IMG/VR virus record: IMGVR_UViG_3300030419_008158
Coordinates: 62,001-126,000 of that record
Direction: 5' to 3' (one strand)
DNA length: 64,000 bases
A program made the position numbers and the translations under genes. The notes below the pieces were generated by a model. The model ran no database searches and was not told the DNA's origin. It was given only the letters and a program-made list of their open reading frames with translations. Position 1 is the first letter of the stretch. Every line of letters begins with the position of its first letter. Of this stretch, positions 3,116 through 64,000 are shown one piece after another.

Positions 3116-6100
3116 TTAGATGCTGTTACTAACAACAAAATCAAGCGACACAAATTCAACCGATCTCGTGGGCTGCAAGAAGATGCGGCCACGAATGGTA
3201 TTGTTCTCGATATCCGCCTGTGTCGTGGTGGTAGTATCGATTATTACTCTAAATCTATCCAATCCGCCTTGTGACTGCACATCGGCGAGAATTGGCTGAA
3301 CTCTTGCTTGAAAAGCCGCAATTGTTGCTGCCTGGTTGGGCTCAAACAAGAATGTTCTAGCAACGTCTCTAACACGGCGTCTGACGTCGATGAGCAGCCT
3401 TCTAACATTAACTCTATCAAGAGCACTTTGTGCTGCCAGTAGAGTCTTCTGTCCAAAGACCGTTACACCGCCCGAAGATGTTACATCACCAATAATTGGG
3501 TTGATGTCTGCTGTGTAGAGATCGTCTCTGTTTTGCTGTAAAAGCTCAACTCCGGGATAAATTGCTGATGGGAGCACGCCTCTGGTAAAGCCAGCGGGTG
3601 CAAACCAAGGATGTGCCAAGGAATCGTTGAGAGAGAATGCTCCCAAAACGACCGCCGTAGCAGGTGCTTTTACATTTGTTCTTGTTGCGGGATCTGCTAC
3701 AACAACATCAGGATAATAAGCAGCTGCAAATGAAGAGTCAAGTGCACGTCCCGAAAATCTATTTATTGTATTTGCAACGCTTGGAATCTGCAAAGAGGAA
3801 GTTACAAAAGTATCAACTTCATCCTTTTCTTCTACATCCATCAGGAAGAGAGCGTCGAATCTTCGCTCTGTGGCTTCCATCGCGTAGTCTGTAACTGCTG
3901 GGTGTCTAATTCCCGGTATTGCCAGGAGCTGTACATCTACATCTTGCTTTGCTTCCATCAAGTCCATGGCTTTTCTATAAGCTGCAACCGTTGGACCAGA
4001 TTTTCCTCCCTGGTTTGTGTCTGTCATTTCTCTTCTAACAGCTGCATCGCTCAGCTTAGCTTTGTCGCTATTGAAGACATTGACTCCGTCCCATCCTCCA
4101 ATCATCGGAAGTGTAAACTTGAGATATTTTTGTGTGGGAACATGCGAGAAATCTTTTGAAGGATCCAAGAATCGAGATCCGATGCCGGCGGTGCCGTCTC
4201 TGTTTGTAAGAGTAGTTGCCGCAACTCCGTTTCTCTGGTACTTGGCAGCTGCCCATTGTTGTGGGTCTGGCCTATCATTTGATCCAGTAATAACCTCGAC
4301 TCTCTCTAGAGAAAAGAAGTTGTTATTGAATTTGTCAGCGTCAAGAACGGATCCAGCAACATCAGCTGTCCCCTCGTTAGACCCTACCCACGGATTCTCG
4401 TTGACCGTGTGGAAATTTGGGAACCACTTAGCAAACGATAGGAGCGAAGTATCGATCTTTTCGTTGGCGTTGGGGCGAGCGATGCTGGTCTTGTTTTCAA
4501 ACTGGACACCCCACGTAAAGTCTACCTTTACATTTTTCCGTGGAGACACACCCACTGCGATGTTTTCTCTCATTGGAATTGGAGGCTGTACGACTCTTGC
4601 CAGCTCATCACCTGAAATGCCTACATCATCTGTAATTGCTTGAGTTGAGTAAAGTCCTGTCAAAATGGAAGTCTTGTCAGACGTTCCAGATGTCACTAGG
4701 TGGTGTACTCCTCTAAATCCTGTTGGGAGAGCAGACGCATCAACTGCACCATTCTTTAACTCAGAGCTTATTTCAACTCTAACAAAGTTTGAAACATTAG
4801 CATAGTCGCCCTCTACAACGACTTTTTGAGCTCCGCTGGACGCATCAAAGTCAAAGAATGTATTTCTATCTCCGATTCGCTTAGCAATATAGTTGTCACT
4901 TGTAAGATCAAGTGAGCACCCTCTGAAGGATTCTACTACTTGAGGATTCAAATCATTGTCGAGGAAACGTCTCACTAGAACATCAAATGTTCCATATTTG
5001 TTGTTAGCTTTGCTTGATGCTTTGACATTTTCAATTGTGATCTTAAATTCACCAGAACCAATTGATCCGTCAGACAGCGTGTGGAATCTAAACAGATTTG
5101 TATTTCGTGCACCAAACTTTTGAGAAACAATAAAGGGAGAAAATGCTGCACTAAATCTATCTTCCCAGTTTTCAAAGTTTGGAGTTCCAACTTTTGATGC
5201 TGTTGTAGTAGTGCCTGTGTTTCTCGCCTGTGAACCTGTAAGGAGCATGACTGCCTCTTCCAGATTGGAACGCGCTCCACCCGATACACCGCCTGTTCTT
5301 GCATCTCCGCATAAGTCAGTGATAACATTAGTTCCTGTTACAACTGCCAAGTTTGTGCTAACATCGTAATGTGCATACAAGTAGTGACCAGCATCCTGAA
5401 TTTTCTTAGGATCTGTGTTGAAGACATTGACGAAGTAGTTCGGTGCAGCCGGGTCCATAGAAGCGGTCAGAACATTGTTGTATTGGTCGTTCTTCTTAAG
5501 ACCGTTGACAAGCATCACGAACTGATTTGTGCTTGTGTTGATCGATCCTATCGGTGCACCGGCGTTCTCGGAAGCAGTAAACACCAAGCTTGCTGCCCTA
5601 TCGTCTGCGACAGCATTGTTGGGCTCAAGCGTTGAACTTAGCCCCAAAACCACTCCGGAAGGCGCCATAAGCACACCTCGAAGAATTGGGTGAGCTATGT
5701 TCTGTCCAGATGTCTGTATGCCTGCTTCACTAAAGATCGTAGATCCGGCTGATTCTGACATAAGAGTGACAAGCATGTGTGTTCTACCAAGGATGCTGTT
5801 TCCATCGTCACCTCCGGAAAAGTTTGATTCCGTGATACCGCCGTTTATCGTCAGGCGATCAGCATCTCCATTTGTGACTGCTGATATTGTTGTGTTGCCA
5901 AGTCGACCTGACGTTACTTGAGCTACCGTAATAGTGTCATCAGTTGCCGTAGTTGTAGACAAAGTTGCAGTCATTCGTCCGCTGTGACCAAGCGAGGACT
6001 CGATAGCAGCTTTGATTTGTGCTGCAATTGTGCCTTCGGAGCTTAATCCCTTGATGTCTGCAAGAATTGAAACCCCGTCTGAGCTCGTATCGCCTGTCTC

Positions 6101-6643
6101 ATAGGAATCAGCTAGCGCGTCGTGAGTCTGAAATTGCCTGCTTGTACCATCTGAGGAGACCAGGGTGAATTTCATGTCTCGTAGCTGTGCTGGGTTGGAT
6201 GTCTTTACAATTATTGTTGCCGTAGCAGCTGTACCAGCTGCTGTGATTGCACCAGCTTTTTCGTTGTTCCCTAGAAGACCGTTGGCTTGCGGGAGTCTAT
6301 CACCGACAACAAAGCCTGCGTTGTTTACACGACCCGCATTGTCACCTGTTGATTTTCTGGCTGTTCCGTCTCCGGCGCCTAGAACACGAACGTAAGTACC
6401 TGCCCCTGCGTTTCTAAGCCACTCTCGCATAGCGATTGGGCCAAATTTTTCCCCATCAGAGTTTCCAAAGACAGAGATGAAGTCTTGGAAGGTTGCAACA
6501 GTAACTGGAACGAATGCAGGACCTCTAACAGCGGTTCCTACCACACCAGCCGGTATGCCTGTTGGGGATATCTGTGTTGGACCCGAAAGATCAATCTCCC
6601 GGGTTACCACGCCTGGGCTAACTGGAAATGTTAACTCTGCCAT
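3116..6643 (-). CDS. gp18: Tail sheath protein, paralog 2 (gp18-like)
   Basis: N-terminal SPGVVTREIDLS and GPAFVP; C-terminal PWFAPAGFTRG, INPI, FGQKTL, ALDRVNVRRLL and FEPN. Confidence 0.95.
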   Translation of the reverse strand: MAELTFPVSPGVVTREIDLSGPTQISPTGIPAGVVGTAVRGPAFVPVTVATFQDFISVFGNSDGEKFGPIAMREWLRNAGAGTYVRVLGAGDGTARKSTGDNAGRVNNAGFVVGDRLPQANGLLGNNEKAGAITAAGTAATATIIVKTSNPAQLRDMKFTLVSSDGTSRQFQTHDALADSYETGDTSSDGVSILADIKGLSSEGTIAAQIKAAIESSLGHSGRMTATLSTTTATDDTITVAQVTSGRLGNTTISAVTNGDADRLTINGGITESNFSGGDDGNSILGRTHMLVTLMSESAGSTIFSEAGIQTSGQNIAHPILRGVLMAPSGVVLGLSSTLEPNNAVADDRAASLVFTASENAGAPIGSINTSTNQFVMLVNGLKKNDQYNNVLTASMDPAAPNYFVNVFNTDPKKIQDAGHYLYAHYDVSTNLAVVTGTNVITDLCGDARTGGVSGGARSNLEEAVMLLTGSQARNTGTTTTASKVGTPNFENWEDRFSAAFSPFIVSQKFGARNTNLFRFHTLSDGSIGSGEFKITIENVKASSKANNKYGTFDVLVRRFLDNDLNPQVVESFRGCSLDLTSDNYIAKRIGDRNTFFDFDASSGAQKVVVEGDYANVSNFVRVEISSELKNGAVDASALPTGFRGVHHLVTSGTSDKTSILTGLYSTQAITDDVGISGDELARVVQPPIPMRENIAVGVSPRKNVKVDFTWGVQFENKTSIARPNANEKIDTSLLSFAKWFPNFHTVNENPWVGSNEGTADVAGSVLDADKFNNNFFSLERVEVITGSNDRPDPQQWAAAKYQRNGVAATTLTNRDGTAGIGSRFLDPSKDFSHVPTQKYLKFTLPMIGGWDGVNVFNSDKAKLSDAAVRREMTDTNQGGKSGPTVAAYRKAMDLMEAKQDVDVQLLAIPGIRHPAVTDYAMEATERRFDALFLMDVEEKDEVDTFVTSSLQIPSVANTINRFSGRALDSSFAAAYYPDVVVADPATRTNVKAPATAVVLGAFSLNDSLAHPWFAPAGFTRGVLPSAIYPGVELLQQNRDDLYTADINPIIGDVTSSGGVTVFGQKTLLAAQSALDRVNVRRLLIDVRRRVRDVARTFLFEPNQAATIAAFQARVQPILADVQSQGGLDRFRVIIDTTTTTQADIENNTIRGRIFLQPTRSVEFVSLDFVVSNSI

Positions 6644-6672
6644 TTTTTCTCCTGCTTGTATCTACTTATCAT

Positions 6673-9600
6673 TTACTCAAAGCTCACGCCACTGTTTGTG
6701 ATGATAAAGTCAATTGCTATAAACTCAACAGCACGGGTTGGAACAACCTGAATTGACGCCCTTAGTCTATTTTGTTCGACGTCAGCTGCTGTATTATTAG
6801 TATCGTCGCAAATGACCTTGAAGGCCTCGATTCCTTGTCCTGCCTGAACTGCTGTTAGCTGTTGAACTGTTTTGGCGACAAAATCAGCTCTTGTAGCTGC
6901 ATTATTCTGCTCAAACACGATGTTGTTTGCGATTCCTGTGACTCGTCGTTTGACGTCCAGAAGCATTCTTCTAACATTGATTCTGTCAAGTGCAGATTGT
7001 GCAACTTGAAGCGTCTTTTGACCAAAAATTACGAAGCCTGCGCGTGGGAACGTGGCAATTGGGTTGATTCTTGCATCGTATAGATCGTCTCGATCATTAG
7101 ATGAAAGTCTATTTTCAACATTTGACACGAAGGACAGCGCGCCTCGACTGAATCCGGCCGGGGCGAACCACACCTGCTTGTCTCTATCATTGAATCCAAG
7201 TGCTCCAACTGCGGCAATTGAAGGTGGTACTTCCACAACTCGATTATTAACATCATCATTGATATTGACATTCGGGAAGTATGTAGCAACGTAATTGTTG
7301 TCAATTGCTCTACTTTCAAACTGTGACACTGTTTTTGTCACATCAGATCTATTGCCTGAGTCATCGTATAGTCTGGTCGTATCTTTGTCGTACTCGGGTA
7401 TGTCCATGAGATACATAGCAAGCCCATACTTTTTGACCGCATCAGACGCGTGATCTGTGACGTAAGAATCTCTAGCTCCGGGCACTGCAAGAAGGTTAAT
7501 TCTTGTTGTGACTGGGTTTGTTATTATGTCAATTCCTTTTTGCAGTGAGTAGACCTGGTTGTTTCTTCGGCCAGCTCCTGCTGGGTTTTTCGGTGCCGTT
7601 CCATCACCACCCAAACCGATGACGGGATCAGTAACATTTTTTCCGCCAACGTCAGCAGACAATGCCCTGTCGCGGAAATAGAATTGATCCTCGTCAAGAA
7701 TATTAACTCCGTCGAACCCACCGTAGAAGATGTTTGTATACTTGGCAAACCCTGTAAAACGATTGAACAGAGCTGAAGACGTTGCAAGAAGCGACGCCAT
7801 TGTAATTCTATTGCTTCTAGTACCGTCATTGACTGTATACGTCGTTGAATTTGGTATTCCGTTTCTTACGTAAGCTGCTTCAAGTATATGTTCTGATGCT
7901 GTTCCTGTTACGCGAGTCGTTACTTCTGAAAGAGTGTCTGCATGATTGTACAGAGCGACTCGTGCTAAAGAAAACTTATTGCAGTTGAACACATCTTTTC
8001 CGGAGCCTGTAACCAGTGCATCCAGCTTCTCAATTCCCACGAATTTTGTGTATGCTCTAACAAGTGGGTTGATGCCTGCACCTTTGTTCGCATCTAAAGC
8101 AGCATTTGTCATTCCTAACACTGAGTCTGTGGAGGAAGACATCGGCGTGGGATTTGTTTTAACACCCCAATACAGACGACCGTCAACTCTTTCATCATCT
8201 CCAGGTTTACCTAAAAAGTCCGGGCTAGAGTTGACTGGCCCTTTTGTTACCTTGACTCTGTAAGGCATGGGAGGAACAATTGAAGCAGATGCGGGTATTC
8301 CGTCCACACCGTTTGTCAATCTTCTAGTAACTGCATCACCATATGTTGTTCCGTCAACTGTAAGAGCAGAAGTAGGCCCATCTGTAAGCGTGTCTGTCGT
8401 CTTGAGAGTGGGTATTCCACGATAGCCAAAGGGAAGTGCATCCTTGGGTGTAATTCCCTTGTCCGCTTGCTCGTTCATGACTATTCTAATTCTGGCAGAA
8501 ACATTTGGATATTTTCCTGTCACAACTAAGCGTCTTTCGTCCGGATCTTCCTGATCGAAATCGAATCTTACTTTTTTGTCTCCGATGAGACGTGCAACAT
8601 AACGATCTGATTTTGGATCGAGAGAGCAGTTTGGATATCTTTCAAGAATTGAAGAATTTCCGTCACTATCTTCAAAAGATCGAACTTGAACTTCAAATGA
8701 TCCAAAGGGCTGCTTTTCATTTGTCGAAGCTTTAAGACCCGCAATTGAAATTTTGAATTTTTCATTTGCATATGCACCATCATCTATACACTCAAAATGG
8801 AAAAGATCAAATTCTGCCTTGCCATAAGGTTGAGAAATGAATGATGTAGTTCTTGGTGTTGTATATCGAGTATCAAATCTACCGAACAGCACTTCAAACT
8901 GATTAGTCAAAGGATCATCACCGGAAGTGTTTTGTGTTCCGCTCAAAATTCTAACTGAAACATTGCCAGAATCTGATATCACTGGGGCTAAGTCGTGCTC
9001 GACAGCAAAATCTGCATAAAGCAAATGCTGCTCTTCTTGGAATCTCAGGGGATCTGTATTGAGAATTTTACCAATGTATGCTCCGTCGCTTGGATCTAGA
9101 GAGGCAGACAAAATACGAAGCCCTGCAAATGTCTCATCGGATCCGTATGTCTTGCCCTCAGAAGAGCTTAGAATTAGCTTGAAATATTTTGACTGCGTTA
9201 GAGAAGATCCACCAATTGCTCCAACTTTTGCTTCGTTTGTAGCCGCTGAAACATTAAAAAATGCATCGTTATCAAGCGTAAGAAGTCTTGTTCCTGAAGA
9301 TAGCAAAACCATCCCTCTGATCAAGCTCATATCATTTGCGCTTACGATGCTGTCGTTGTCTGTAAAGACTGGAAAACCGTTGGCTTCTTCTGCAGCTGCA
9401 TTGTGTCTAGCAGTAATAAACTGAACTGAGCCTTTTGAGGCCATTAGACCGTTTGCACCCGCTGCTGTATCAAGCGTCCCGGACACTATAAACCCTGCAT
9501 TCGAAACGACGCCTGCAGTTCGTGTATTCCCTATATGTGTTGCTGTTTCGTTTGCGCCAGCACCCAAAACTCTAACGTACGTGCAAGCTGTTCGCTGATC

Positions 9601-9822
9601 CAGCCATTTTTGCACTGCATACGGTCCAAATCTTTTGGGATCAAGTGATCCGAACTTTGTTTCAAAGTCTTCAAACGATCCAACTGTAACCGGTACGAAA
9701 GCGGGTCCCTTCTGCGCGGTGCCTACAATTCCCGCTGGAATTCCTGTTACCGACGTGGTTCGACCCGATAAATCGATTTCTTGATCGAAAAATCCTGGCG
9801 ATCTAAAAGTCTGCTCTGCCAT
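6673..9822 (-). CDS. gp18: Tail sheath protein, paralog 1 (gp18-like)
   Basis: SPGFFDQEIDLS, KGPAFVP, WFAPAGFSRG, RINPIATFP, FGQKTLQ and LDRINVRRML. Confidence 0.95.
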   Translation of the reverse strand: MAEQTFRSPGFFDQEIDLSGRTTSVTGIPAGIVGTAQKGPAFVPVTVGSFEDFETKFGSLDPKRFGPYAVQKWLDQRTACTYVRVLGAGANETATHIGNTRTAGVVSNAGFIVSGTLDTAAGANGLMASKGSVQFITARHNAAAEEANGFPVFTDNDSIVSANDMSLIRGMVLLSSGTRLLTLDNDAFFNVSAATNEAKVGAIGGSSLTQSKYFKLILSSSEGKTYGSDETFAGLRILSASLDPSDGAYIGKILNTDPLRFQEEQHLLYADFAVEHDLAPVISDSGNVSVRILSGTQNTSGDDPLTNQFEVLFGRFDTRYTTPRTTSFISQPYGKAEFDLFHFECIDDGAYANEKFKISIAGLKASTNEKQPFGSFEVQVRSFEDSDGNSSILERYPNCSLDPKSDRYVARLIGDKKVRFDFDQEDPDERRLVVTGKYPNVSARIRIVMNEQADKGITPKDALPFGYRGIPTLKTTDTLTDGPTSALTVDGTTYGDAVTRRLTNGVDGIPASASIVPPMPYRVKVTKGPVNSSPDFLGKPGDDERVDGRLYWGVKTNPTPMSSSTDSVLGMTNAALDANKGAGINPLVRAYTKFVGIEKLDALVTGSGKDVFNCNKFSLARVALYNHADTLSEVTTRVTGTASEHILEAAYVRNGIPNSTTYTVNDGTRSNRITMASLLATSSALFNRFTGFAKYTNIFYGGFDGVNILDEDQFYFRDRALSADVGGKNVTDPVIGLGGDGTAPKNPAGAGRRNNQVYSLQKGIDIITNPVTTRINLLAVPGARDSYVTDHASDAVKKYGLAMYLMDIPEYDKDTTRLYDDSGNRSDVTKTVSQFESRAIDNNYVATYFPNVNINDDVNNRVVEVPPSIAAVGALGFNDRDKQVWFAPAGFSRGALSFVSNVENRLSSNDRDDLYDARINPIATFPRAGFVIFGQKTLQVAQSALDRINVRRMLLDVKRRVTGIANNIVFEQNNAATRADFVAKTVQQLTAVQAGQGIEAFKVICDDTNNTAADVEQNRLRASIQVVPTRAVEFIAIDFIITNSGVSFE

Positions 9823-9926: not shown

Positions 9927-11261
9927 TTAAATAACTTCCCTGTAAACGACTTCACCTTTTCTACTGGTACGTGTCTTTACATAGGACCTAACGTCCTCAT
10001 TGTCACCCGTAAAAGGATTAACTTCATTTTCTAGAACTGTAGTTCTTACAGGTGTTCCACTCCCTCCCTTTTCTTGCGAACCCGTCACAAAAGCTGGGTA
10101 AGAGACGATATCATTTGATGCACCGCCAATCAGGGCAGTATCTTCCTGGTCAAAATTGGTCACTCCTGGGTGTCGAGGATCAGTGGAAGACCTACTTCTT
10201 GCACCTGCTATCGATTGACCTGGAAGTGGCGCATTAATATTTCTATCGTCTAAAATATAATCATTCGGATCGCCACTTGGAATGTTAGAATTTTTTACCT
10301 GATTTTCTATCTCACCATTGACAAAATTCATCCCAAATGTAAGTTGAGGTGCTGATGTTGTTGAGCGAAGTCTGTTTGGAGCACCCGGATATGTTTCTCC
10401 CAACAAATAACCAGGAACCTTTAGGGTAAATGATGTTCTGATTATTCTCTCGTCATCTGTAAAATCATCAAAATTATTGCCTGGATCAAAATTTGATTCC
10501 AAATAAGCTACAAATGTATATCCTTTTTTTGTTTCTAGACGAAAAGTTCGACCACCATAACTTTGCATGTTAGACATTATTGCCATTTCGATATCATTCA
10601 TTTGCTGGATGTACTGTGCCCATATCGTTACTTCATATGTTGCTGTTATGAACTGTACGGGAGGCATTTCGATAACTTCGAATATATTGTTCTTGTTGTC
10701 TAAATCCAACAAGTTTCCTCTTCTAACACCCAAAGGAACAAGCGAGCCTGCCCTTCTAGAAGCTATTCGACCGGGTTGTGCATTCTGGTATGCTTTTGAT
10801 CCTGTTGTAATAAATGCAGCCTGGGTCGGAAGGTCATCAGAGCTCACCAAGCCGAGCTTATTTACAATTCTTTGATATCTTGCATCCTTTTTTGAAAGCT
10901 TCTTTTTTATAATATGTGGTACCGACTGGTTAGATGCAAGACCCATCTCGTTTTGCGACACCACACCCTGTCTCATCATTGACACTACAGGTAAAATTAG
11001 GGCATTATTTTTATCTCTTAGTGGTTTTTTTCTCGCAATAAGCGCAAATCTTTCACCTGCAGCAAAAACCACAGGAACCCTTTTTGTTTTCTTTTTGTAT
11101 GTGTAGTGAATTGGTAGATCACGATCAAATAAATCAAACACAGCACGATCTATATCTTCTATGGTGCAGCTAGGAATCTCTAGAATTGCATCTGATGCAT
11201 TTTCTTTGTCAATTGGTACCGTACCTTGGAGGTGAGCCTCTGTTGTCTCTCTAATACTCAT
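9927..11261 (-). CDS. Tail completion / sheath stabiliser (gp15-like)
   Basis: VPVVFAAGERF, LILPVVSM, P....TYEVTIW..YIQQMNDI and ERIIRTSFTL match gp15-like proteins; located between neck and sheath genes. Confidence 0.7.
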   Translation of the reverse strand: MSIRETTEAHLQGTVPIDKENASDAILEIPSCTIEDIDRAVFDLFDRDLPIHYTYKKKTKRVPVVFAAGERFALIARKKPLRDKNNALILPVVSMMRQGVVSQNEMGLASNQSVPHIIKKKLSKKDARYQRIVNKLGLVSSDDLPTQAAFITTGSKAYQNAQPGRIASRRAGSLVPLGVRRGNLLDLDNKNNIFEVIEMPPVQFITATYEVTIWAQYIQQMNDIEMAIMSNMQSYGGRTFRLETKKGYTFVAYLESNFDPGNNFDDFTDDERIIRTSFTLKVPGYLLGETYPGAPNRLRSTTSAPQLTFGMNFVNGEIENQVKNSNIPSGDPNDYILDDRNINAPLPGQSIAGARSRSSTDPRHPGVTNFDQEDTALIGGASNDIVSYPAFVTGSQEKGGSGTPVRTTVLENEVNPFTGDNEDVRSYVKTRTSRKGEVVYREVI

Positions 11262-11264
11262 AAA

Positions 11265-11930
11265 CTAGCTCTCATCATAAAAAGAAGACGATATTCCCGA
11301 ATCATCTCCTTGAGGTGATACTTCAGCTGGGCCTGAAATTGGTTTTGTGAGTGTGCCGTTTTTCTGCAACTCTCTTACATCCCCTGTTTTGCCTAAACGA
11401 TTCTCATCAAATCCTCGTTGTTGCACAAATGTTTCCTGTACTGACCCAGGATCTGTATAACTTTCGTCTGTAGGGCCATGTGGAACAAGATCAATCTGTC
11501 CTTGACGTGCCTGCTTCCCAAGCAACTGAACGCCCATTGCATGTTCAATTTGCCCATAAATGTTTGACTCTACTTGTTGTTGAATTATTTCAAAAAAAGT
11601 TGCATCATAAGAAAAGTAATCTCCAATTCGAACGTCTATGTTTCTATCAAGCAAGTCTCGATTGTGAAGATAGACATTAATATCATAAACTCCTTCGGCG
11701 CCGTATCTATTAGTTCTTATAGACTCGGGTTGATATTCTACCCTGGCTTCAATTTCTATAGGCACGTCGAAAACCTTATTGAGTGACTCTTCGTACACAT
11801 CATGTATTTTTGTTACATCGTGTCTGACGGCGTAATAGTATATTTTTTGACCTACAACGTCTTTGATAAGCTCTTTATTGACGTCGTTTATGAAATCAAT
11901 TTCTCTGGGTGATAAAAATAGACGAGACAT
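11265..11930 (-). CDS. Neck / head closure protein (gp14-like)
   Basis: ELIKDVVGQKIYYY, VYEE and IGDYFSY...FFEI motifs; synteny. Confidence 0.7.
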   Translation of the reverse strand: MSRLFLSPREIDFINDVNKELIKDVVGQKIYYYAVRHDVTKIHDVYEESLNKVFDVPIEIEARVEYQPESIRTNRYGAEGVYDINVYLHNRDLLDRNIDVRIGDYFSYDATFFEIIQQQVESNIYGQIEHAMGVQLLGKQARQGQIDLVPHGPTDESYTDPGSVQETFVQQRGFDENRLGKTGDVRELQKNGTLTKPISGPAEVSPQGDDSGISSSFYDES

Positions 11931-11935
11931 TTACT

Positions 11936-13105: not shown

Positions 13106-13120
13106 TGGCAACTCCAATGA

Positions 13121-19573: not shown

Positions 19574-20035
19574 TTAAAGTGGACCAGGTGTCGTTCTTTC
19601 TAGAACTTCGCTCCAATTTTTTGTCGCCTCACCAAAAAGTGTGCTAATATCAATTCCTGCAGAACCTCCTCCTACTGCTGGTGACAAAGGAGATTCAAGA
19701 TTTTGTGATGTTGTGGGCATTTGACGCTCATGTCCCATCTGCTCTTGAAGTGTTGTTCTTGCTGTGTCTGCCAAGATGCTTTGCAAAACAGGATCTGAAG
19801 TTGCTGCTGAAGCGGCTTGATTGACTTTTGTATCAAACGTAATGTGATCAGATGCACTTGGTTTTCTTTCAAACGCTTCGTCCATTTGATCAAACAAGCT
19901 TTTCTTTTTTGATGGCTGCTTTGTACGATTTCTCTTTTCAGATATTACATCTGTTTCTCCAAGCCCTTCAGATAAAATTTCAACAAGGCACTCTTTGACT
20001 ATTCCTTTTAGCATTCTTTTTGTAATTTTAGCCAT
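19574..20035 (-). CDS. Putative internal head protein with KITKRMLKGIVKE leader
   Basis: Leader similar to that of the 19252 ORF; ILSE and VISE candidate protease sites. Confidence 0.6.
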   Translation of the reverse strand: MAKITKRMLKGIVKECLVEILSEGLGETDVISEKRNRTKQPSKKKSLFDQMDEAFERKPSASDHITFDTKVNQAASAATSDPVLQSILADTARTTLQEQMGHERQMPTTSQNLESPLSPAVGGGSAGIDISTLFGEATKNWSEVLERTTPGPL

Positions 20036-50632: not shown

Positions 50633-50633
50633 A

Positions 50634-56643: not shown

Positions 56644-56650
56644 TTCTTCC

Positions 56651-58495
56651 TCACACAGCTGTTCCAATTACATCAAACGAAGGAAACTTTAGCTCGAATA
56701 TTGATCCTCGATCAGGTATTATCATACCTTTTGTTTGACTTTGTTTAAAATCAAATGTATTGGTGTTATAAACCCTATCTTCAACTTGCCCAAATCGAGG
56801 AAATACTTGAAGATCGACAAGTGAGATAACAAAATTAGAATTGATAATAATGTTTGTAATGTCATCAATAATAATTGGCTGATCTATGTTGAAGTATTCC
56901 TTTTCAAAAGCCAGACTAATTGCTGAATTTATCGATGTAAGCACTTGATTTTTGTTGGCATTTTCTGCTACAAAAACGCTGTACTTAATTCCAAAGTTTA
57001 TTACCTTTGCATCCAAAATATCTACGGCATCACCTACCAAGCGAAGCTCATTTAAATAAGTGCTTACATTTTTTTTCAAAGAGTCAGGGGCCACGCCTAG
57101 GCTTCCGTCTTCATTTTTTGAAAGCACATAAACAAGTGCAGAACCGGGATTTATAGGATTGGGTGCTATAGATGCCCTATAGATTCTTCCAAACTCACTA
57201 GGTAGCGTATATAGACGCGCCAGTAAATCTTCTTTTGACACCACTCTTCTTTGAGATTTTCTTGCTGAAGTGATGCGGGCTTTTAAGTCAGTTAGTGTTG
57301 GAGCTTCATCGCCTCCCCTAGCAGATTCTGGATTTGTCACTAAAACTGATTGTCTTACAGTGAGCGCATCGGTTGCACTAGGATTTCTTCTAAATGTTAG
57401 CGAAAGAACATCTACTGACTCGATTGCGTTGGACGAGACATTGTGAGACAATCCTCCCCCATGTCTATATCTGACTGTTAAGTTTGTTCCGCGAGGACTT
57501 ATACCTAAAGTTTGCGTCTCTAAAAGTGATGCTGGATCTATGCTAAACCTAGGTACAACAGTCTTTCCATACAAATTGAGAGAAAGCTCGCTGGGATCGG
57601 GTATAATGTCATCGTCAAGTGTTCCTGCATTGCCGCTTCCAAACCTTACAGTAGTCAATTGAGTTGTTGGGTCATAGCGTCGAGTAAATCGATAGGGTGC
57701 TGCTATGACTCTCATAAAATAGGGGACCTGTGATGCATCTGCTGTTTGATTTTTTGTCTTTAGAAATACAGTATCTTCGCTCAAAGATGACACTTCATAA
57801 TATGTGTTAGAATCAGTATCTTTGATAGACAGAATAGCAGTGATAAATTTTTGTGATAAAGTAAACTCTCTAAATGGTACAAATGTATCTGACACTGTTA
57901 TAGTTTCTGTCGTTTCCTCTCCTGAGACTGCTATTACGTCCCTGGAGACTTTAAATGATTTTGGTTGGCCATTGGCCTCTGTAGCAGATATTATGTAGCT
58001 GGCTAAAAAATTACCGTCTTCGTCTTGCTCAGAAAAATCTATGTCTTCTGTCGTGGTAAATGTTACACCTGTAAAAGAAGATGTTTGTGTTCCTGCCAAT
58101 ATTACGGGCATTGCGCTTCTTTTAGGCAAATACAGACCATTGACCTGCTCAGCAGGAACTGTTATTGTAAATTTTAAACTTACAACAGACGGAGATGCCC
58201 CAACTATGTCGACTCCCGCATTTCTTAGGTGTGTGATAATGCTGTCAGACTCAACTGCCCGCAGAGGGTCAAGTTCTCTGAAGGCGTGGTCTAAATAAAA
58301 ACTTAGTGAATCACCAACTGTTGCTGCAAAATCCAAAAACATTCCGCCAACTGATGGTTCAGAAAAGTCCTGGATTTTATCCGGAAAGTATGTTCTAGCT
58401 GTATCTAAAAGCTGCGCTCGTATTGTCTCAAAATCTCGAGCAATATACGTTCTATTTTGCTCTTTTTTTATCTTTTTCTTTACTTGAAATGCCAT
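56651..58495 (-). CDS. gp6: Baseplate wedge protein (T4 gp6 / baseplate J-like)
   Basis: RDFETIR, DFSEPSVG, GDSLSFYLD, FGSG, YRHGGG..NV, GGDEA and QRRVVSKED. Confidence 0.88.
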   Translation of the reverse strand: MAFQVKKKIKKEQNRTYIARDFETIRAQLLDTARTYFPDKIQDFSEPSVGGMFLDFAATVGDSLSFYLDHAFRELDPLRAVESDSIITHLRNAGVDIVGASPSVVSLKFTITVPAEQVNGLYLPKRSAMPVILAGTQTSSFTGVTFTTTEDIDFSEQDEDGNFLASYIISATEANGQPKSFKVSRDVIAVSGEETTETITVSDTFVPFREFTLSQKFITAILSIKDTDSNTYYEVSSLSEDTVFLKTKNQTADASQVPYFMRVIAAPYRFTRRYDPTTQLTTVRFGSGNAGTLDDDIIPDPSELSLNLYGKTVVPRFSIDPASLLETQTLGISPRGTNLTVRYRHGGGLSHNVSSNAIESVDVLSLTFRRNPSATDALTVRQSVLVTNPESARGGDEAPTLTDLKARITSARKSQRRVVSKEDLLARLYTLPSEFGRIYRASIAPNPINPGSALVYVLSKNEDGSLGVAPDSLKKNVSTYLNELRLVGDAVDILDAKVINFGIKYSVFVAENANKNQVLTSINSAISLAFEKEYFNIDQPIIIDDITNIIINSNFVISLVDLQVFPRFGQVEDRVYNTNTFDFKQSQTKGMIIPDRGSIFELKFPSFDVIGTAV

Positions 58496-58974
58496 TAGTT
58501 TGCCACCACGATTGAAACCTCTACTATCTGATTAGTTGCATTAATTGACGGGATCGAATACCCCACCTTTATTGTATTTACTATTACGTCTCCCTCCGGA
58601 GTTGCCGACGTTTCAAATGTTTCTAGCGAAACATAGGGCAAATATTTTGTAACAGCAGCAGAAATTCTTGCAAGTGCTTCTTCGATAACATCATTAGAAG
58701 TCATATCATAAGACAGCTCTTTTAAGTTCGCACCGTAGTCTGTAAGCATCAATCTCTCTCCGTGATTGGTGCTCAATAAATTTTTCATGTTATCCCGAAC
58801 TTGATCGACAAGTCTTTTTGACATCTTAAACATCGACTCTTCATCTTGCTCAAAAGAAATAGGCGTCAATATCCCTATGGGAAGACTTACAGCTGTGTCT
58901 TCCTTCATTGTCTGGACCTTACTTTGCAAGTTCCCAACAGATTTGAAATCGTATATTTTTTTAGCCTGTGCCAT
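58495..58974 (-). CDS. gp25: Baseplate wedge / sheath initiator (gp25-like)
   Basis: QVRDNMKNLLSTNHGERLMLTDYGANL and KYLPYV. Confidence 0.88.
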   Translation of the reverse strand: MAQAKKIYDFKSVGNLQSKVQTMKEDTAVSLPIGILTPISFEQDEESMFKMSKRLVDQVRDNMKNLLSTNHGERLMLTDYGANLKELSYDMTSNDVIEEALARISAAVTKYLPYVSLETFETSATPEGDVIVNTIKVGYSIPSINATNQIVEVSIVVAN

Positions 58975-61516: not shown

Positions 61517-61517
61517 T

Positions 61518-61903: not shown

Positions 61904-62278
61904 CTATCTATAGTTGCGCCAATTCCACAAAGGGCGCTTTGACAAATAAGTTGTTTTTCTCTGATTGTCGTATGCTTCCTTTTCAAAGGGATTTTGATTG
62001 TACCCTTCTACAAAACTTCTGTGCTTTAGAGAACCCCACAGAAAATAAAAAGTGTAGACAAGCCAGTGAAAAAGAAACAACATCTCAATTTGCTGAATGT
62101 AATGAATCGTCTCATGGCGCTTTGATGTCTTTGACAAAGACCCTCTAGAAAAAACAAAGCACAAAATATTAACTGCTCCAATTTCAATCGGTGACACCTT
62201 TGAAAGCCAAATCGGCACCTTGCTGTTCTCAAAAATCCACGGCGTTCTTCTTGAAAGCCACTTTCTTATGACGGACAT
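61904..62278 (-). CDS. Small zincin-like HExxH protein with hydrophobic segment
   Basis: RHETIHYIQQ.E, a hydrophobic helix and NPFEKEAY (third ligand candidate). Confidence 0.65.
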   Translation of the reverse strand: MSVIRKWLSRRTPWIFENSKVPIWLSKVSPIEIGAVNILCFVFSRGSLSKTSKRHETIHYIQQIEMLFLFHWLVYTFYFLWGSLKHRSFVEGYNQNPFEKEAYDNQRKTTYLSKRPLWNWRNYR

Positions 62279-63021
62279 TATAGACCTCCTTTTTCTTTTT
62301 CTTCCACCACTAATCTAGAATAAATCTTTCTTATTTTGCTCATTGATTTTGTCAAGTGCTTTTTTTCCAAACCGGAAATCTCGCACAAGTAAATGTAAAT
62401 CGACTGTTTATTGATAAAATCAAGCTCTTGAGCATTATCAAACAATTTTTCAACTGCACTAATTGTAATCAGGTCTCTATCGTCAGATAGATGCTCTCTT
62501 ACTTTCTTAACTCTAGCTATGTTTTCAGCTCTATTTTCACTGTTAATGATTAGCTCTTCTGTTGACGGAAGCTCAACATATCTATCAATTTGCTGCTTTA
62601 TCAGAGAATCGCCCTTGCGTGACGTTACTTCGTCCAAATAAACGTGCTTGAAATACTTTTTTCTATGACTATTTGTCGTATTTATTAGAAAGTTTTTAGC
62701 AACTACATTGAAATAGCTGAATGCTTTGGACCCTTTGGCTGGGTCCCACTTATGAAGTGACTTATAAAGAAAAAAGCAACCCTCCTCTATGAGTTCTTGT
62801 GTGTTCATAAGCGGAGACTTAAATCCGTAGACGTAGATCAGACTTTCGACCAATTTTTTCATTGCTGGAAGAATTTCCTGACCGTATACTTGTTCTCTCT
62901 CTTTTTTCTCTTCAGATGTCAGAAACTTTACAATTGAAACTTCTGTATCTTTGGTAAAATACATCACACTTTTTTGACCAGGGCGCCTCTTTATTCTTTT
63001 TCTGCCTTTTTTTGCCGCCAT
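62278..63021 (-). CDS. Phage sigma factor (T4 gp55-like, probably late transcription)
   Basis: N-terminal YF, ELIEEG..FL...KWDPAKGSKAFSYFNVVAKN (sigma region 2-like) and a C-terminal HTH-like segment. Confidence 0.65.
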   Translation of the reverse strand: MAAKKGRKRIKRRPGQKSVMYFTKDTEVSIVKFLTSEEKKEREQVYGQEILPAMKKLVESLIYVYGFKSPLMNTQELIEEGCFFLYKSLHKWDPAKGSKAFSYFNVVAKNFLINTTNSHRKKYFKHVYLDEVTSRKGDSLIKQQIDRYVELPSTEELIINSENRAENIARVKKVREHLSDDRDLITISAVEKLFDNAQELDFINKQSIYIYLCEISGLEKKHLTKSMSKIRKIYSRLVVEEKEKGGL

Positions 63022-63309
63022 TTATTCTGTCTCCTGTTCTATGTTTTCTATATTTTTTGTAAGCGCTAAAGCAACTGAGTGCAGAGAATCTCTTACAGCA
63101 CTTATGTCGTTAACGACAGACTTTACTTCGGCACTGTCATAAAACAGGGGGCGCTTTAGTACATCTGACATCGTATCATACTTTTCATCAATTACATCCA
63201 GGCATTCTTCGATGGTGTCTTCAAGGCGAATAATTGTGATTCCCAACTTTATATTCTTGTAGACTGAAATGCTCAAAAGAATTCCTAGTATTGTAGCTAA
63301 GTAAATCAT
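63022..63309 (-). CDS. Small membrane-anchored hypothetical protein
   Basis: N-terminal hydrophobic helix, then coiled coil and LFYDSAEV. Confidence 0.65.
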   Translation of the reverse strand: MIYLATILGILLSISVYKNIKLGITIIRLEDTIEECLDVIDEKYDTMSDVLKRPLFYDSAEVKSVVNDISAVRDSLHSVALALTKNIENIEQETE

Positions 63310-64000
63310 CTATAGGTGTTTTCTCACGATACTCTCAAACTTTTCTTGTAATGCTTCCAAAGAGTGAGATTTGATTAGTTTTTCAGAAAGATTTTTCGCA
63401 TGAGCGCTAAACTGATTGGGTTTTTCATACACAGCTTTCATTTTTCTGCAAAAGTTTCCCTCTCTTGGATTTGCCCAAGCTGATCCGGCTACAAATATTT
63501 TTCCGTCAATTCTAGCAGGAGGTACAGGGCACATATCAAACTTTACTTTCTGAAAACTGGCGCCTTCCAAAAACTCTGTATGGGCAGACCAGTCTGTTGC
63601 AACAACTGGAAGTCCAGAAACTGCTGCCTCAAGCAGGGGCAAACCAAACCCTTCCCCACGAGTTGCAGACATATATCCTATAAGTTTCTGACTCTTGTAA
63701 ACATTTTTCATTTCCTCTCGAGTCATTGTGCCGTGCATCATATAGAGTTTTGGTGCTCTGTCTAAATTCACACTTGAAGAAGCCCTCACCTGTCTTAAAG
63801 TTTTTCTGACCAACTCTCTGTCTATTGTAGTGTCTCTTCCTCTAGATGTCTTTACAATCAACCCTACATCTTTTTTCCCTTCAAACGCCTTCAAAAACCA
63901 AAGAATACTCGATAATAAATTTTTTCTATCTGCATCAGGATTATCGCTAGTTAGAGTGCCTACTGTTAGAAAGTTTTTGTCTGTCGGTATGTCTTCTAAA
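63310..64000 (-). CDS. Glycosyltransferase family 4 (GT-B), C-terminal part
   Basis: Frame open to the window end (...DRKNLL...), with RGEGFGLPLLEAAVSGLPVVATDWS signature. Confidence 0.9.
   Translation of the reverse strand, partial: LEDIPTDKNFLTVGTLTSDNPDADRKNLLSSILWFLKAFEGKKDVGLIVKTSRGRDTTIDRELVRKTLRQVRASSSVNLDRAPKLYMMHGTMTREEMKNVYKSQKLIGYMSATRGEGFGLPLLEAAVSGLPVVATDWSAHTEFLEGASFQKVKFDMCPVPPARIDGKIFVAGSAWANPREGNFCRKMKAVYEKPNQFSAHAKNLSEKLIKSHSLEALQEKFESIVRKHL

What the first reader, a model, noticed from the sequence alone, without database searches (positions are those of the whole stretch)
3116..64000. Dense [S/T]-[G/A/S]-[S/T] motifs in virion-surface proteins plus a phage glycosyltransferase: candidate virion glycosylation system
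Seen: motifs such as VTGS, LSGS, ISGS, ITGS, TSAS, FSAS and MSSS recur very often in the sheaths, neck, MCP, the 20035 ORF and especially the baseplate/fibre proteins. Examples: the 30654 ORF has PTGS, NGTGS, ITSAS, YTGS, VTGS, LSGSS, VSTAS; the 51617 ORF has FSGSAS, ISGS, LSGS, TSGS, TTGS, ITGS; the 47048 ORF has RTGS, STGS, ATGS, LTGS, ITGS, LSGS. By eye they are scarce in TerL, primase, Mre11/Rad50, RuvC, sigma and scaffold. A GT4 glycosyltransferase sits at the upstream end of the region. Known: some mycobacteriophages glycosylate capsid and tail proteins with their own glycosyltransferases. Inference: the tripeptide is a sequon for a phage-encoded O-glycosylation system that coats the virion. 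Counts were not computed.
Basis: partly seen in the sequence, partly recalled or inferred. Interest (0 to 1): 0.75.

Follow-up and report, generated by a model that had tools for sequence, protein, structure and literature searches.

The report
Candidate glycan-coating system of a jumbo phage
The exposed tail, baseplate, fibre and capsid proteins of this 284-kb phage carry two to three times more Ser/Thr-Gly-Ser/Thr triplets than their composition predicts. The phage also encodes a large soluble sugar-building gene island led by a conserved pair of glycosyltransferases, so a sugar-coated virion is a reasonable but unproven reading.

Summary
The signal is [ST]-G-[ST], with Ala or Ser sometimes replacing Gly.

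- **Size of the excess.** In 13 unannotated baseplate/fibre ORFs (window 30654-56667) there are 64 motifs against 22.8 expected (2.8x, z 9.5). It survives 12-residue local shuffles and is order-specific ([ST][ST]G is 1.05x).
- **Where it is and is not.** Sheaths, MCP and neck show 2.0x. 212 non-virion ORFs show 1.13x. Hidden virion parts (gp6-like, gp25-like, hub, portal, tube, tape-measure-like) show none.
- **Nature of the signal.** It is not a DNA motif and not due to paralogy. It is conserved in orthologues with S/T swaps and positional turnover.
- **Sugar genes.** The GT4 at the window's end is one of a conserved, predicted-interacting GT4 pair. Upstream lies about 22 kb of soluble genes for sugar-nucleotide synthesis and glycosyl transfer.
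- **Comparison with other phages.** The GT4 pair and a strong motif excess co-occur throughout one large aquatic phage clade. T4, KVP40, crAss001 and phiKZ show no significant excess. Cyanophages without GT1/GT2 hits show a weaker, less order-specific one.

Nothing links the motif to the enzymes directly, and shared ancestry confounds the correlation. Virion O-glycosylation with this motif as sequon is the best single explanation (about 0.4).

The parts
63310..64000 (-). GT4 glycosyltransferase of 390 aa. The ORF runs on to window coordinate 64482, past the window end. It is the downstream member of the conserved GT4 pair.
   Evidence: Pfam PF00534 32.7 bits and PF20706 GT4-conflict 27.3 bits. 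The EX7E motif is conserved in orthologues. Predicted to bind the adjacent 413-aa GT4: ipSAE 0.81 against a best control of 0.00.
62278..63021 (-). Late sigma-factor-like gene lying between the GT4 pair and the baseplate genes (context).
   Evidence: phrog_234 at E 1.3e-5. The order GT4-GT4-sigma-...-gp25-gp6 recurs in IMG/VR relatives.
56651..58974 (-). gp6-like and gp25-like inner baseplate wedge proteins. They serve as an internal negative control: no [ST]G[ST] at all.
   Evidence: phrog_219 and phrog_43. 0 motifs here and in every orthologue, against 0.7-1.4 expected.
44071..56667 (-). Seven ORFs downstream of gp6 (527, 1155, 327, 1194, 284, 369 and 319 aa), taken to be peripheral baseplate or fibre proteins and rich in [ST]G[ST].
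   Evidence: No PHROG hits. Laminin_G_3 domains in two of them. The 527-aa protein models as a chain of beta-sandwich domains. Motif counts are 6, 12, 2, 10, 3, 5 and 4. Orthologues keep 4-9 motifs against 1.35 expected.
30654..44067 (-). Six further large unannotated ORFs (829, 418, 231, 591, 1288 and 1079 aa), presumed fibre or baseplate proteins. The first two are the most motif-rich in the window.
   Evidence: No PHROG or Pfam hits. 30654-33143 has 10 motifs vs 2.1 expected (z 5.8); 33172-34428 has 6 vs 1.2 (z 4.8). The 231, 591, 1288 and 1079 aa ORFs show no excess.
20035..20439 (-).
   Evidence: Translation. No family hit.
14443..16323 (-). Major capsid protein, gp23-like, with a long insertion.
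   Evidence: phrog_138 at E 1e-71. 6 motifs vs 1.6 expected (z 3.7), four of them at residues 136-201, N-terminal to the best conserved stretch (PHROG match 356-608).
9927..13117 (-). Neck region: a 444-aa protein (weak gp15-like match), a 221-aa ORF and an Ad2-type head-tail adaptor.
   Evidence: phrog_211. PF16724 is weak. 3 and 2 motifs.
3116..9822 (-). Two tandem tail-sheath paralogues of 1175 and 1049 aa.
   Evidence: phrog_23 at E 1e-55 and 7e-58. 5 motifs each, all N-terminal to the C-terminal core matched by the narrower sheath PHROGs (from about residue 820/960).
2585..3073 (-). Tail tube protein, hidden under the sheath, with no motif.
   Evidence: phrog_4542 at E 3.8e-31. 0 motifs.

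Best explanation
The window is the structural half of a 284-kb T4-related jumbo phage from an uncultured aquatic clade. Its cultured relatives infect Flavobacterium, Microcystis and Rhodothermus.

I propose the following mechanism:
1. Late in infection, soluble phage enzymes make activated sugars. One route is a GDP-6-deoxyhexose/fucose route built on GDP-mannose 4,6-dehydratase. A second is an HldE-like kinase and nucleotidyltransferase route to a heptose-like or other rare sugar.
2. A clade-specific heterocomplex of two GT4 enzymes attaches the first sugar or sugars to Ser/Thr hydroxyls. The targets are short hydrophobic-hydrophobic-[ST]-[G, sometimes A/S]-[ST] motifs on the exposed parts of virion proteins in the cytoplasm.
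3. A strain-variable set of further transferases (GT2 twice, GT11, GT6, a GT4-like enzyme and an HtrL-like enzyme) extends the glycan.
4. A methyltransferase, a carbamoyltransferase and a radical-SAM enzyme decorate it.

The result would be a virion coated with a lineage-variable O-glycan.

Shown: the motif excess with its distribution and conservation, the gene content, the lack of membrane machinery, and the predicted GT4-GT4 interface. Inferred: that proteins are the acceptors, that the motif is the sequon, and which enzyme primes.
For: **The motif**
- The excess is order-specific and cooperative. ST-G-ST is 2.55x, while ST-G-hydrophobic is 0.84x and hydrophobic-G-ST is 1.06x. TGS and TGT are the top well-populated tripeptides of the virion set.
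- It is a protein-level signal: 61 distinct 9-mers encode the 85 motifs.
- It occurs in at least 10 families with no detectable similarity to one another.
- Exposed proteins carry it and hidden ones do not. gp6-like, gp25-like, hub, portal, tube, tape-measure-like and two other giants together have 7 motifs vs about 12 expected.

**Conservation**
- Motif S/T keep a hydroxyl in 89% of orthologue comparisons, against 65% for other S/T. Motif Gly is kept in 89% against 74%.
- 62 homologues at 26-91% identity keep 4-9 motifs against 1.35 expected, with some invariant sites and others gained or lost.
- At variable sites the alternative residues are 53% charged and 20% hydrophobic, against 33% and 36% in background columns.

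**The enzymes**
- About 27 consecutive soluble genes upstream include at least 8 GT-like proteins, Gmd (E 1e-127), epimerases, a carbamoyltransferase, a methyltransferase and HldE-like modules.
- None of them has a transmembrane segment.
- The module PD-(D/E)XK nuclease, GT4(413), GT4(390) is conserved in 68/76 and 71/78 IMG/VR loci, next to variable sugar genes.
- The complex prediction gives 0.81 against a best control of 0.00. That mark was reached by 51 of 78 solved complexes and 2 of 108 mismatched pairs.

**Other phages**
- GT4(413) homologues occur in only 7 of 50,697 GenBank phage records: immuto (four records), Mel-JY01, LR756508 and RM378. These are the top MCP relatives. The four genomes tested across all S/T-rich ORFs show 2.4-3.5x; LR756508 was examined only around its MCP (4 motifs vs 0.8 expected). 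80 clade loci show 2.1-2.6x.
- T4 0.75x, KVP40 1.23x, crAss001 1.17x.
- There is no ThyA-family hydroxymethylase and no C5 DNA methylase in this complete genome. A TET/JBP search was also negative but uninformative, because its control rang nowhere.
Against: - There is no biochemical evidence of any glycoprotein.
- The GT-motif association is one clade-wide co-occurrence and may simply be shared ancestry. Every sizeable clade record carries the GT4 pair, so there is no independent contrast.
- Phages without GT1/GT2 hits (P-HM1 1.54x, S-PM2 1.53x), and RsoM2USA (1.68x, one weak GT1 hit), also show an excess, though it is less order-specific. Measured genome-wide on S/T-rich ORFs, this phage's own value (2.08x, order index 1.63) is not far above them.
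- In the AF2 model, two of the six motifs lie inside beta-strands and one is a helix N-cap. Some sites may therefore be structural or inaccessible.
- Four of the 13 fibre-region ORFs show no excess.
- Non-virion phage proteins are not depleted of the motif (1.13x).
- In immuto the GT4 pair lies far from the structural genes, and in RM378 it lies next to an ORF annotated as similar to DNA polymerase I.
- Glycosyltransferases of surface-polysaccharide loci are also soluble or peripheral proteins.
Confidence: 0.4

Rival explanations
1. The motif is a lineage-specific structural preference, for example a favoured strand-end or turn element in the beta-sandwich and fibre domains of this clade. It has nothing to do with sugars. 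The GT island acts on something else, most likely host envelope glycans (LPS, capsule or S-layer glycan), using the host's own lipid-carrier machinery. The purpose could be to block superinfection or to stop progeny re-adsorbing to debris.
For: - The flanks are hydrophobic and four of the six modelled motifs sit at strand ends or inside strands.
- Four sites are near-invariant across 62 homologues, as a structural element would be.
- A weaker excess exists in GT-less cyanophages.
- The GT-motif link is phylogenetically confounded.
- The GT families present (GT2, GT4, GT11, an HtrL-like enzyme) together with Gmd are typical of O-antigen and capsule loci.
Against: - The motif appears in at least 10 families with no detectable similarity to one another and in mixed secondary-structure contexts, so it has no single structural role.
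- Its density is held at about five times expectation while positions turn over.
- Variable sites swap with charged residues.
- The beta-rich fibres of T4 and its Ig-domain protein Hoc show none.
- The phage encodes no initiating phosphoglycosyltransferase, flippase, polymerase or ligase-like polytopic protein.
Confidence: 0.3
2. Virions are glycosylated by the phage enzymes, but the acceptor sites are chosen by something other than the tripeptide, such as fold, local exposure or other residues. The [ST]G[ST] excess is then a by-product.
For: Same enzyme evidence as the main explanation. Many bacterial O-glycosylation systems have no strict sequon (established knowledge). Four fibre-region ORFs lack the excess.
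Against: The specific conservation of both hydroxyls and the Gly, and the maintained density, call for a selective reason tied to the triplet itself.
Confidence: 0.13
3. The conserved GT4 pair and the sugar island glycosylate phage DNA, as in T-even phages, and the protein motif is unrelated.
For: - The pair is always next to a PD-(D/E)XK nuclease and often near PhoH.
- GT4(390) passes the Pfam 'GT4 in conflict systems' model.
- In RM378 and LR756508 the gene lies near DNA-metabolism genes.
- Phage DNA glycans are known to be diverse (Pyle et al. 2024, as cited in PMC12619734).
Against: - This CheckV-complete genome has no ThyA-family dCMP/dUMP hydroxymethylase, although the T4 positive control rang.
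- It has no C5 DNA methylase.
- It gave no TET/JBP hit, though that search's control rang nowhere, so it is uninformative.
- No known hydroxymethyl acceptor can therefore be made.
- Known pentosyl or glucosyl DNA systems come with those enzymes (PMC12838424).
Confidence: 0.07
4. The triplet is the target of a different modification or recognition event. One candidate is Ser/Thr phosphorylation by the RIO/TCAD9-like 265-aa protein encoded inside the sugar island. Another is binding by an assembly chaperone.
For: A weak kinase-like hit (RIO1 at E 0.004; TCAD9 at 23.9 bits, under its cut-off of 40) lies in the island. Both hydroxyls are conserved.
Against: The kinase-like hits are below threshold, and that protein has no detectable homologue in the relatives tested or in the 80 loci. 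No other evidence points this way.
Confidence: 0.05

Closest known systems
Mycobacteriophage virion O-glycosylation (Che8, Corndog, Myrna; Freeman et al. 2023, known here only through citations in PMC12619734 and PMC12801897)
   Same: Phage-encoded cytoplasmic glycosyltransferases are proposed to decorate exposed virion proteins. The GT genes sit beside structural genes.
   Different: In mycobacteriophages the glycans are reported at the C-termini of the capsid and tail-tube subunits (PMC12619734). Here the candidate sites are dispersed triplets in sheath, MCP insertion, baseplate periphery and fibres. The tail tube has none and the MCP C-terminus is a conserved non-S/T sequence. This island is also large: at least 8 GT-like genes plus sugar-nucleotide pathways. 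Nothing has been demonstrated here.
Chlorovirus PBCV-1 capsid glycosylation by virus-encoded soluble enzymes (review PMC7019647; details from my own knowledge)
   Same: The virus encodes GDP-mannose 4,6-dehydratase and soluble GTs, and builds an atypical glycan on its capsid protein without the host's membrane pathway. The chlorovirus GT4 B736L is among the weak PDB matches of both GT4s.
   Different: PBCV-1 glycans are N-linked at non-canonical Asn sites, and the host is a eukaryotic alga. There is no sign there of a two-GT4 core or of an [ST]G[ST] motif.
GtfA/GtfB priming of serine-rich-repeat adhesins in Gram-positive bacteria (my own knowledge)
   Same: Two adjacent GT-B proteins form a complex and O-glycosylate Ser in short S-small-S repeats in the cytoplasm, and further GTs extend the glycan. 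GtfA structures (4pqg, 5e9t) are the top, though non-significant, PDB sequence matches of GT4(390). The phage pair is predicted to bind.
   Different: There is no DUF1975-type insertion domain (Pfam). Both phage proteins keep EX7E, so neither looks like an inactive GtfB. The acceptors are folded virion proteins with dispersed motifs, not long Ser-rich repeats. Sequence similarity is negligible (E 0.03-0.04).
T-even phage DNA glucosylation or arabinosylation
   Same: A T4-related phage carrying its own glycosyltransferases and sugar-activating enzymes.
   Different: No hydroxymethylase, C5 DNA methylase or TET was found. The enzymes belong to different GT families.
'Moraphages', large aquatic Bacteroidota phages with four GT orthologous groups in their core genome (PMC12619734)
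   Same: Large aquatic phages with predicted Bacteroidota hosts and several conserved glycosyltransferases of unknown role. The authors list DNA, host serotype and virion as possible targets.
   Different: That paper places its lineage outside the T4 group, whereas this phage has gp23-, gp6- and gp25-like proteins. I did not test whether the two lineages overlap. No motif analysis was reported there.

Membership tests
CAZy GT4 / Pfam Glycos_transf_1 retaining GT-B glycosyltransferases (the two core enzymes) | A match to PF00534 above the gathering score | tested here: met
   32.7 and 43.3 bits against a cut-off of 26.4.
CAZy GT4 / Pfam Glycos_transf_1 retaining GT-B glycosyltransferases (the two core enzymes) | An EX7E motif in the C-terminal domain | tested here: met
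   EGFGLPLLE at residue 277 of GT4(390) and EGFGLATLE at residue 284 of GT4(413). The first Glu and the Gly residues are conserved across orthologues.
Phage virion O-glycosylation of the mycobacteriophage type | Phage-encoded glycosyltransferases next to virion structural genes | tested here: met
   The GT4 pair lies 5-7 kb upstream of the gp25/gp6-like genes, and the island is flanked by fibre-like giants.
Phage virion O-glycosylation of the mycobacteriophage type | Acceptors are S/T-rich C-terminal tails of the capsid and tail-tube subunits | tested here: not met
   The tail tube (window 2585-3073) has no motif. The MCP C-terminus is a conserved non-S/T sequence. Candidate sites are dispersed.
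Phage virion O-glycosylation of the mycobacteriophage type | Glycans demonstrated on virion proteins | not testable with these tools
   This needs glycostaining and mass spectrometry of purified virions.
GtfA/GtfB-type two-component protein O-glycosyltransferase | Two adjacent GT-B proteins that form a complex | tested here: inconclusive
   The genes are adjacent in 71 of 78 loci. Predicted binding scores 0.81 against a best control of 0.00 (51 of 78 solved, 2 of 108 mismatched). This is a model, not a measurement.
GtfA/GtfB-type two-component protein O-glycosylation | A DUF1975-type insertion domain and a catalytically inactive partner | tested here: not met
   No such Pfam hit. Both proteins keep EX7E.
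T-even-type DNA base glycosylation | A means of making hydroxymethyl-pyrimidine: a ThyA-family hydroxymethylase, or a C5 methylase plus TET | tested here: not met
   PF00303 gives no hit in the complete genome while T4 gives three. PF00145 gives none. PF12851 gives none, but its control was silent.
Lipid-carrier-dependent surface polysaccharide locus (Wzx/Wzy or ABC type) | An initiating phosphoglycosyltransferase, flippase, polymerase or ligase, all polytopic membrane proteins | tested here: not met
   None of about 39 ORFs at genome 121-165 kb looks like a membrane protein; the single hydrophobic stretch found is the N-terminal nucleotide-binding strand of an epimerase. The only polytopic ORFs in the genome are 111-224 aa. 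This was a hydropathy scan only, and host enzymes could substitute.
Virus-encoded GDP-6-deoxyhexose supply (chlorovirus-like) | GDP-mannose 4,6-dehydratase plus a downstream reductase or epimerase | tested here: met
   PF16363 at E 1.2e-127, flanked by two SDR epimerase/reductase genes. A GT11 fucosyltransferase-family gene is present. The sugar product itself was not determined.

The most novel reading that the evidence does not exclude
It would do so with a dispersed three-residue sequon, [ST]-G-[ST], read by a clade-specific two-GT4 heterocomplex. A hypervariable island of sugar genes anchored to that pair would supply the diversity. This would be the first sequon-type protein O-glycosylation system described for a phage.
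Probability: 0.35. Interest if true: 0.85.

Novelty: new variant of a known kind. Interest (0 to 1): 0.62.

Why it matters
Virion glycosylation by phage-encoded enzymes is so far documented only for a few mycobacteriophages. If this reading is right, sugar-coated virions would be common among large marine and freshwater phages of Bacteroidota and cyanobacteria. That could affect how long the particles survive, whether they stick to mucus and marine gels, whether grazers or defences recognise them, and how receptor-binding proteins evolve.

A short, predictable sequon together with a two-enzyme primer would also make the system easy to test and possibly usable for glyco-engineering. The hypothesis is directly testable, because three clade members are in culture: Flavobacterium phage immuto, Microcystis phage Mel-JY01 and Rhodothermus phage RM378.

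Tried and rejected
- **Composition alone.** Rejected. The excess survives global, 30-residue and 12-residue block shuffles and same-composition order controls.
Rejected as a bulk signal: [ST]A[ST] is 1.4x (not significant) and [ST]S[ST] is 1.0x. At some orthologous columns, however, TGS, TAS and TSS do alternate.
- **A DNA-level motif.** Rejected: 61 different 9-mers, with codon use close to background.
- **Tandem repeats or one expanded domain.** Rejected. There are no internal repeats, and almost no similarity among the window's fibre ORFs.
- **A general property of phage fibres.** Rejected for T4, KVP40 and crAss001, and not significant for phiKZ. Only partly rejected for the cyanophages and RsoM2USA.
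- **Megablast of the window against GenBank phages.** No match.
- **PHROGs and Pfam on the 12-13 fibre ORFs.** Almost nothing beyond two Laminin_G_3 domains.
- **Solvent accessibility from the AF2 model.** Not possible, because coordinates are not retrievable. I used secondary structure and substitution partners instead.
- **A clade member lacking the GT4 pair.** None found; only small fragments lack it.
- **Reading Freeman et al. 2023.** The paper is not held.
- **Literature on a phage [ST]G[ST] sequon or phage glycoproteomics.** Nothing relevant found.

Full report
**What the window is.** The window is bases 62001-126000 of a 284,429-bp virus record that CheckV rates complete. Almost every gene is on the minus strand. 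PHROG searches place the following, in order of transcription from high to low coordinates:
- a late-sigma-like gene (62278-63021);
- gp25-like and gp6-like baseplate wedge genes (58495-58974 and 56651-58495);
- thirteen large ORFs with no family match (30654-56667);
- RuvC, primase and SbcC;
- TerL, portal, prohead protease and a gp23-like MCP (14443-16323);
- a head-tail adaptor, two tandem sheath genes (6673-9822 and 3116-6643), the tail tube (2585-3073) and a baseplate hub.

The MCP is 36-48% identical to those of an uncultured 484-kb phage (LR756508), Flavobacterium phage immuto, Microcystis phage Mel-JY01 and Rhodothermus phage RM378, and about 33% identical to cyanophage gp23. The phage is therefore a distant T4 relative. 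Its host is unknown; cultured relatives infect Flavobacterium, Microcystis and Rhodothermus.

**Checking the observation.** The quoted examples are all present. I compared counts with shuffles of each protein, done globally and inside 30- and 12-residue blocks.

| Motif | Fibre/baseplate set (13 ORFs, 8,611 aa) | Other virion proteins | 212 other ORFs (57 kaa) |
|---|---|---|---|
| [ST][GAS][ST] | 125 vs 74.5 (1.68x, z 6.7) | 52 vs 31.4 (1.66x, z 4.2) | 203 vs 169.8 (1.20x) |
| [ST]-G-[ST] | 64 vs 22.8 (2.81x, z 9.5; local-12 2.29x, z 7.5) | 21 vs 10.3 (2.0x, z 3.8) | 60 vs 53 (1.13x, z 1.0) |

Splitting the broad motif shows that the signal is essentially [ST]-G-[ST]. Order controls of the same composition are flat or weak: [ST][ST]G 1.05x, G[ST][ST] 1.6x and [ST][ST][ST] 1.0x.

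A class table of a-G-b triplets shows that the effect is cooperative. ST-G-ST is 2.55x, ST-G-hydrophobic is 0.84x and hydrophobic-G-ST is 1.06x. TGS (27 vs 8.1) and TGT (20 vs 6.8) are the most over-represented well-populated tripeptides in the virion set. The context is hydrophobic at positions -1 and -2, and F/L/Q/Y immediately after the triplet.

**What the signal is not.**
- It is not a nucleotide motif: 61 distinct 9-mers encode the 85 occurrences, with near-background codon use.
- It is not tandem repetition or one expanded domain. The fibre ORFs share almost no similarity with one another, and spacings are broad with a median of 54 residues.
- It is not simply a property of all virion proteins. 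The gp6-like, gp25-like, hub, portal, tube, tape-measure-like (1845 aa), 2313-aa and 1042-aa proteins together have 7 motifs against about 12 expected.
- The top z-scores genome-wide belong to a 2356-aa fibre-like giant (46 vs 17.6), several window fibre ORFs and the MCP.
- In the sheaths, all motifs lie N-terminal to the C-terminal core matched by the narrower sheath PHROGs. In the MCP, four of six lie at residues 136-201, ahead of the best conserved stretch.

**Conservation.**
- Eight IMG/VR relatives (72-76% identical at gp6) and one distant one (31%) keep the same gene order after gp6, with equal or stronger excess, for example 18 vs 3.2. Their gp6 orthologues have none.
- Across five orthologue families, motif Ser/Thr keep a hydroxyl in 89% of pairwise comparisons, against 65% for other Ser/Thr. 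Motif Gly is kept in 89% against 74%.
- For the 527-aa protein (55084-56667), 62 homologues of 26-91% identity, mostly from marine metagenomes, carry 4-9 motifs (mean 6.9) against 1.35 expected. Four sites are near-invariant with S/T interchange. Others are gained and lost, and at two columns TGS, TAS and TSS alternate.
- Where a motif is absent from a homologue, the residues replacing its Ser/Thr are 53% charged and 20% hydrophobic, against 33% and 36% at other S/T-variable columns. Those sites are therefore probably exposed.

An AF2 model of this protein (pLDDT 82.6) is a chain of beta-sandwich domains, and Foldseek finds Ig/FN3/CBM-like folds. The six motifs sit in mixed contexts: coil, a helix N-cap, strand ends and strand interiors. 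There is no single structural role, but not all sites are obviously accessible. Coordinates could not be retrieved, so no accessibility was computed.

**The enzymes.** About 24 more soluble genes come next:
- GDP-mannose 4,6-dehydratase (E 1e-127) between two SDR epimerase/reductases;
- a methyltransferase, a radical-SAM protein and a NodU-type carbamoyltransferase;
- a GT-like protein and a HAD-IIIA phosphatase;
- an FSA/transaldolase, a cupin and an AraD-like epimerase;
- a PfkB kinase whose best family match is HldE domain I;
- an RpiB isomerase fused to a nucleotidyltransferase whose best match is HldE domain II;
- another epimerase and an NTP-transferase/HAD fusion;
- an HtrL/YibB-like protein, a GT4 N-terminal-domain protein, and GT6, GT11, GT2 and a 631-aa GT2 protein.

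The NCBIfam matches fall below equivalog cut-offs, apart from the RpiB subfamily models, so the sugars cannot be named. Beyond the island lie three S/T/G-rich giants with shared repeats. The largest has an endosialidase-type C-terminal domain.

None of these proteins has a transmembrane segment, and the genome has no large polytopic protein. The two GT4s are not detectably similar to each other. Both keep EX7E. They are predicted to bind each other: ipSAE 0.81 against a best control of 0.00, a mark reached by 51 of 78 solved complexes and 2 of 108 mismatched pairs.

**Distribution.**
- The nuclease-GT4-GT4 module is syntenic in the distant relative G001, in immuto and in Mel-JY01. RM378 and LR756508 have the 413-aa GT4.
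- In immuto the pair is followed by a different sugar island, with WecE-type aminotransferases, an acetyltransferase, a mannosyltransferase and GT2s.
- Among 50,697 GenBank phage records, the 413-aa GT4 has homologues in only seven. These are the closest MCP relatives.
- In IMG/VR there are at least 593 loci. In the 80 fetched, GT4(390) follows immediately in 71 of 78 and the nuclease precedes in 68 of 76. The neighbouring sugar genes vary widely.
- All sizeable clade contigs that could be checked carry the pair.

**Controls in other phages.** The same statistic was computed on S/T-rich ORFs of at least 300 aa.

| Group | Phage | Observed/expected | Note |
|---|---|---|---|
| Clade | this phage | 2.08x | |
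| Clade | immuto | 2.48x | |
| Clade | Mel-JY01 | 3.48x | partly low-complexity |
| Clade | G001 | 3.17x | |
| Clade | RM378 | 2.41x | |
| Outside | T4 | 0.75x | annotated baseplate and fibres 13 vs 17.2 |
| Outside | KVP40 | 1.23x | |
| Outside | crAss001 | 1.17x | |
| Outside | phiKZ | 1.7x | two ORFs only, not significant |
| Outside | P-HM1 | 1.54x | |
| Outside | S-PM2 | 1.53x | |
| Outside | RsoM2USA | 1.68x | |

Eighty clade loci around the MCP give 2.1-2.6x.

PF00534/PF00535 hits are present in all five clade genomes in the table and, for PF00534, in LR756508. They are absent from T4, KVP40, crAss001, phiKZ, P-HM1 and S-PM2, and RsoM2USA has one weak hit. The strong, order-specific excess therefore goes with the GT4-bearing clade. 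Two cautions apply. A weaker and less order-specific excess occurs without these GT families. And the clade association amounts to a single evolutionary observation.

**Rivals.**
- *DNA glycosylation* is unlikely by known chemistry. The complete genome has no ThyA-family hydroxymethylase, although T4 rang as a positive control. It has no C5 DNA methylase and no TET/JBP hit, though the last search had a silent control. Known pentosylated and glucosylated phage DNAs come with those enzymes (PMC12838424).
- *Remodelling of host envelope glycans* cannot be excluded. The GT families fit, and host lipid-carrier enzymes could be borrowed. But this rival does not explain the motif.
- *A purely structural origin of the motif* remains the main competitor. 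The arguments against it are the motif's spread over unrelated families and contexts, its maintained density with positional turnover, and its absence from T4.

**Comparison with known systems and verdict.** The closest known case is mycobacteriophage virion O-glycosylation. That case differs in its acceptor sites, which are C-terminal tails of the capsid and tube subunits, and its defining acceptor feature is not met here. Functionally the system resembles chlorovirus capsid glycosylation (virus-encoded Gmd and soluble GTs). The two-GT4 core with an S-small-S acceptor resembles the GtfA/GtfB priming of serine-rich adhesins, but membership of that family fails on the insertion domain and the inactive partner.

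I rate virion O-glycosylation with [ST]-G-[ST] as the preferred acceptor at about 0.4. At about 0.5, the island glycosylates virions at all. If true, it would be a new variant of a known kind. The decisive test is glycopeptide mapping of virions of immuto, RM378 or Mel-JY01, and it is feasible.

Noticed in passing
window 3116-9822, and genome 262399-265743 (outside the window): The phage has three tail-sheath paralogues. Two are tandem genes of 1175 and 1049 aa, 31% identical to each other. A third, of 1114 aa, lies about 190 kb away and is 39% identical to the first. All are much longer than T4 gp18.
   Followed up: partly
genome 144188-150016 (L004:1188-7016): A GT11 (alpha-1,2-fucosyltransferase family) gene and a GT6 (blood-group A/B transferase family) gene sit side by side with a GDP-fucose-type supply route (Gmd). 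This enzyme set is reminiscent of histo-blood-group-like glycans and is unusual in a phage.
   Followed up: no
genome 136447-143375 (L003:11447-18375): A run of genes comprising a HAD-IIIA phosphatase, FSA/transaldolase, cupin, an AraD-like epimerase, an HldE-domain-I-like kinase, RpiB fused to an HldE-domain-II-like nucleotidyltransferase, an epimerase and an NTP-transferase/HAD fusion. It looks like a split pathway from pentose-phosphate-cycle intermediates to a nucleotide-activated heptose-like or other rare sugar. Apart from the RpiB subfamily models, the NCBIfam matches are under their cut-offs.
   Followed up: partly
genome 150238-162041 (L004:7238-19041): Three S/T/G-rich giants (481, 1085 and 2356 aa; up to 23% S+T and 39% G+A+S) share internal repeats. 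The largest ends in an endosialidase-type domain (PF12219). They lie directly upstream of the sugar island, and the largest has the strongest motif excess in the genome.
   Followed up: partly
window 25995-30657: Recombination and replication genes (SbcC-like, primase, RuvC-like) are wedged between the head-packaging genes and the fibre genes, so the structural module is not contiguous.
   Followed up: no
genome 143365-144162 (L003:18365-19162): A 265-aa protein inside the sugar island has weak RIO-kinase and TCAD9 similarity. It carries four [ST][GAS][ST] motifs against 0.6 expected. It has no detectable homologue in the relatives tested or in the 80 loci.
   Followed up: no
non-virion ORFs genome-wide: The tripeptides RRI, RQL, IRE, QLR and LRR are strongly over-represented in the non-structural ORF set (for example RRI 34 vs 10). 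This suggests a repeated small-protein family or shared motif elsewhere in the genome.
   Followed up: no
Mel-JY01 record positions 83441-84929 (L037): The Microcystis phage orthologue of the 413-aa GT4 is split into two ORFs of 190 and 302 aa. This is either a frameshift or a genuine split gene.
   Followed up: no
genome 43644-44435 (L005:1644-2435): The SSB-like protein (phrog_1192) has 7 [ST][GAS][ST] against 1.3 expected. It is a non-virion outlier for the broad motif and was not looked into further.
   Followed up: no
genome 256508-256517: A run of 10 N in the record, the only gap in the assembly.
   Followed up: no
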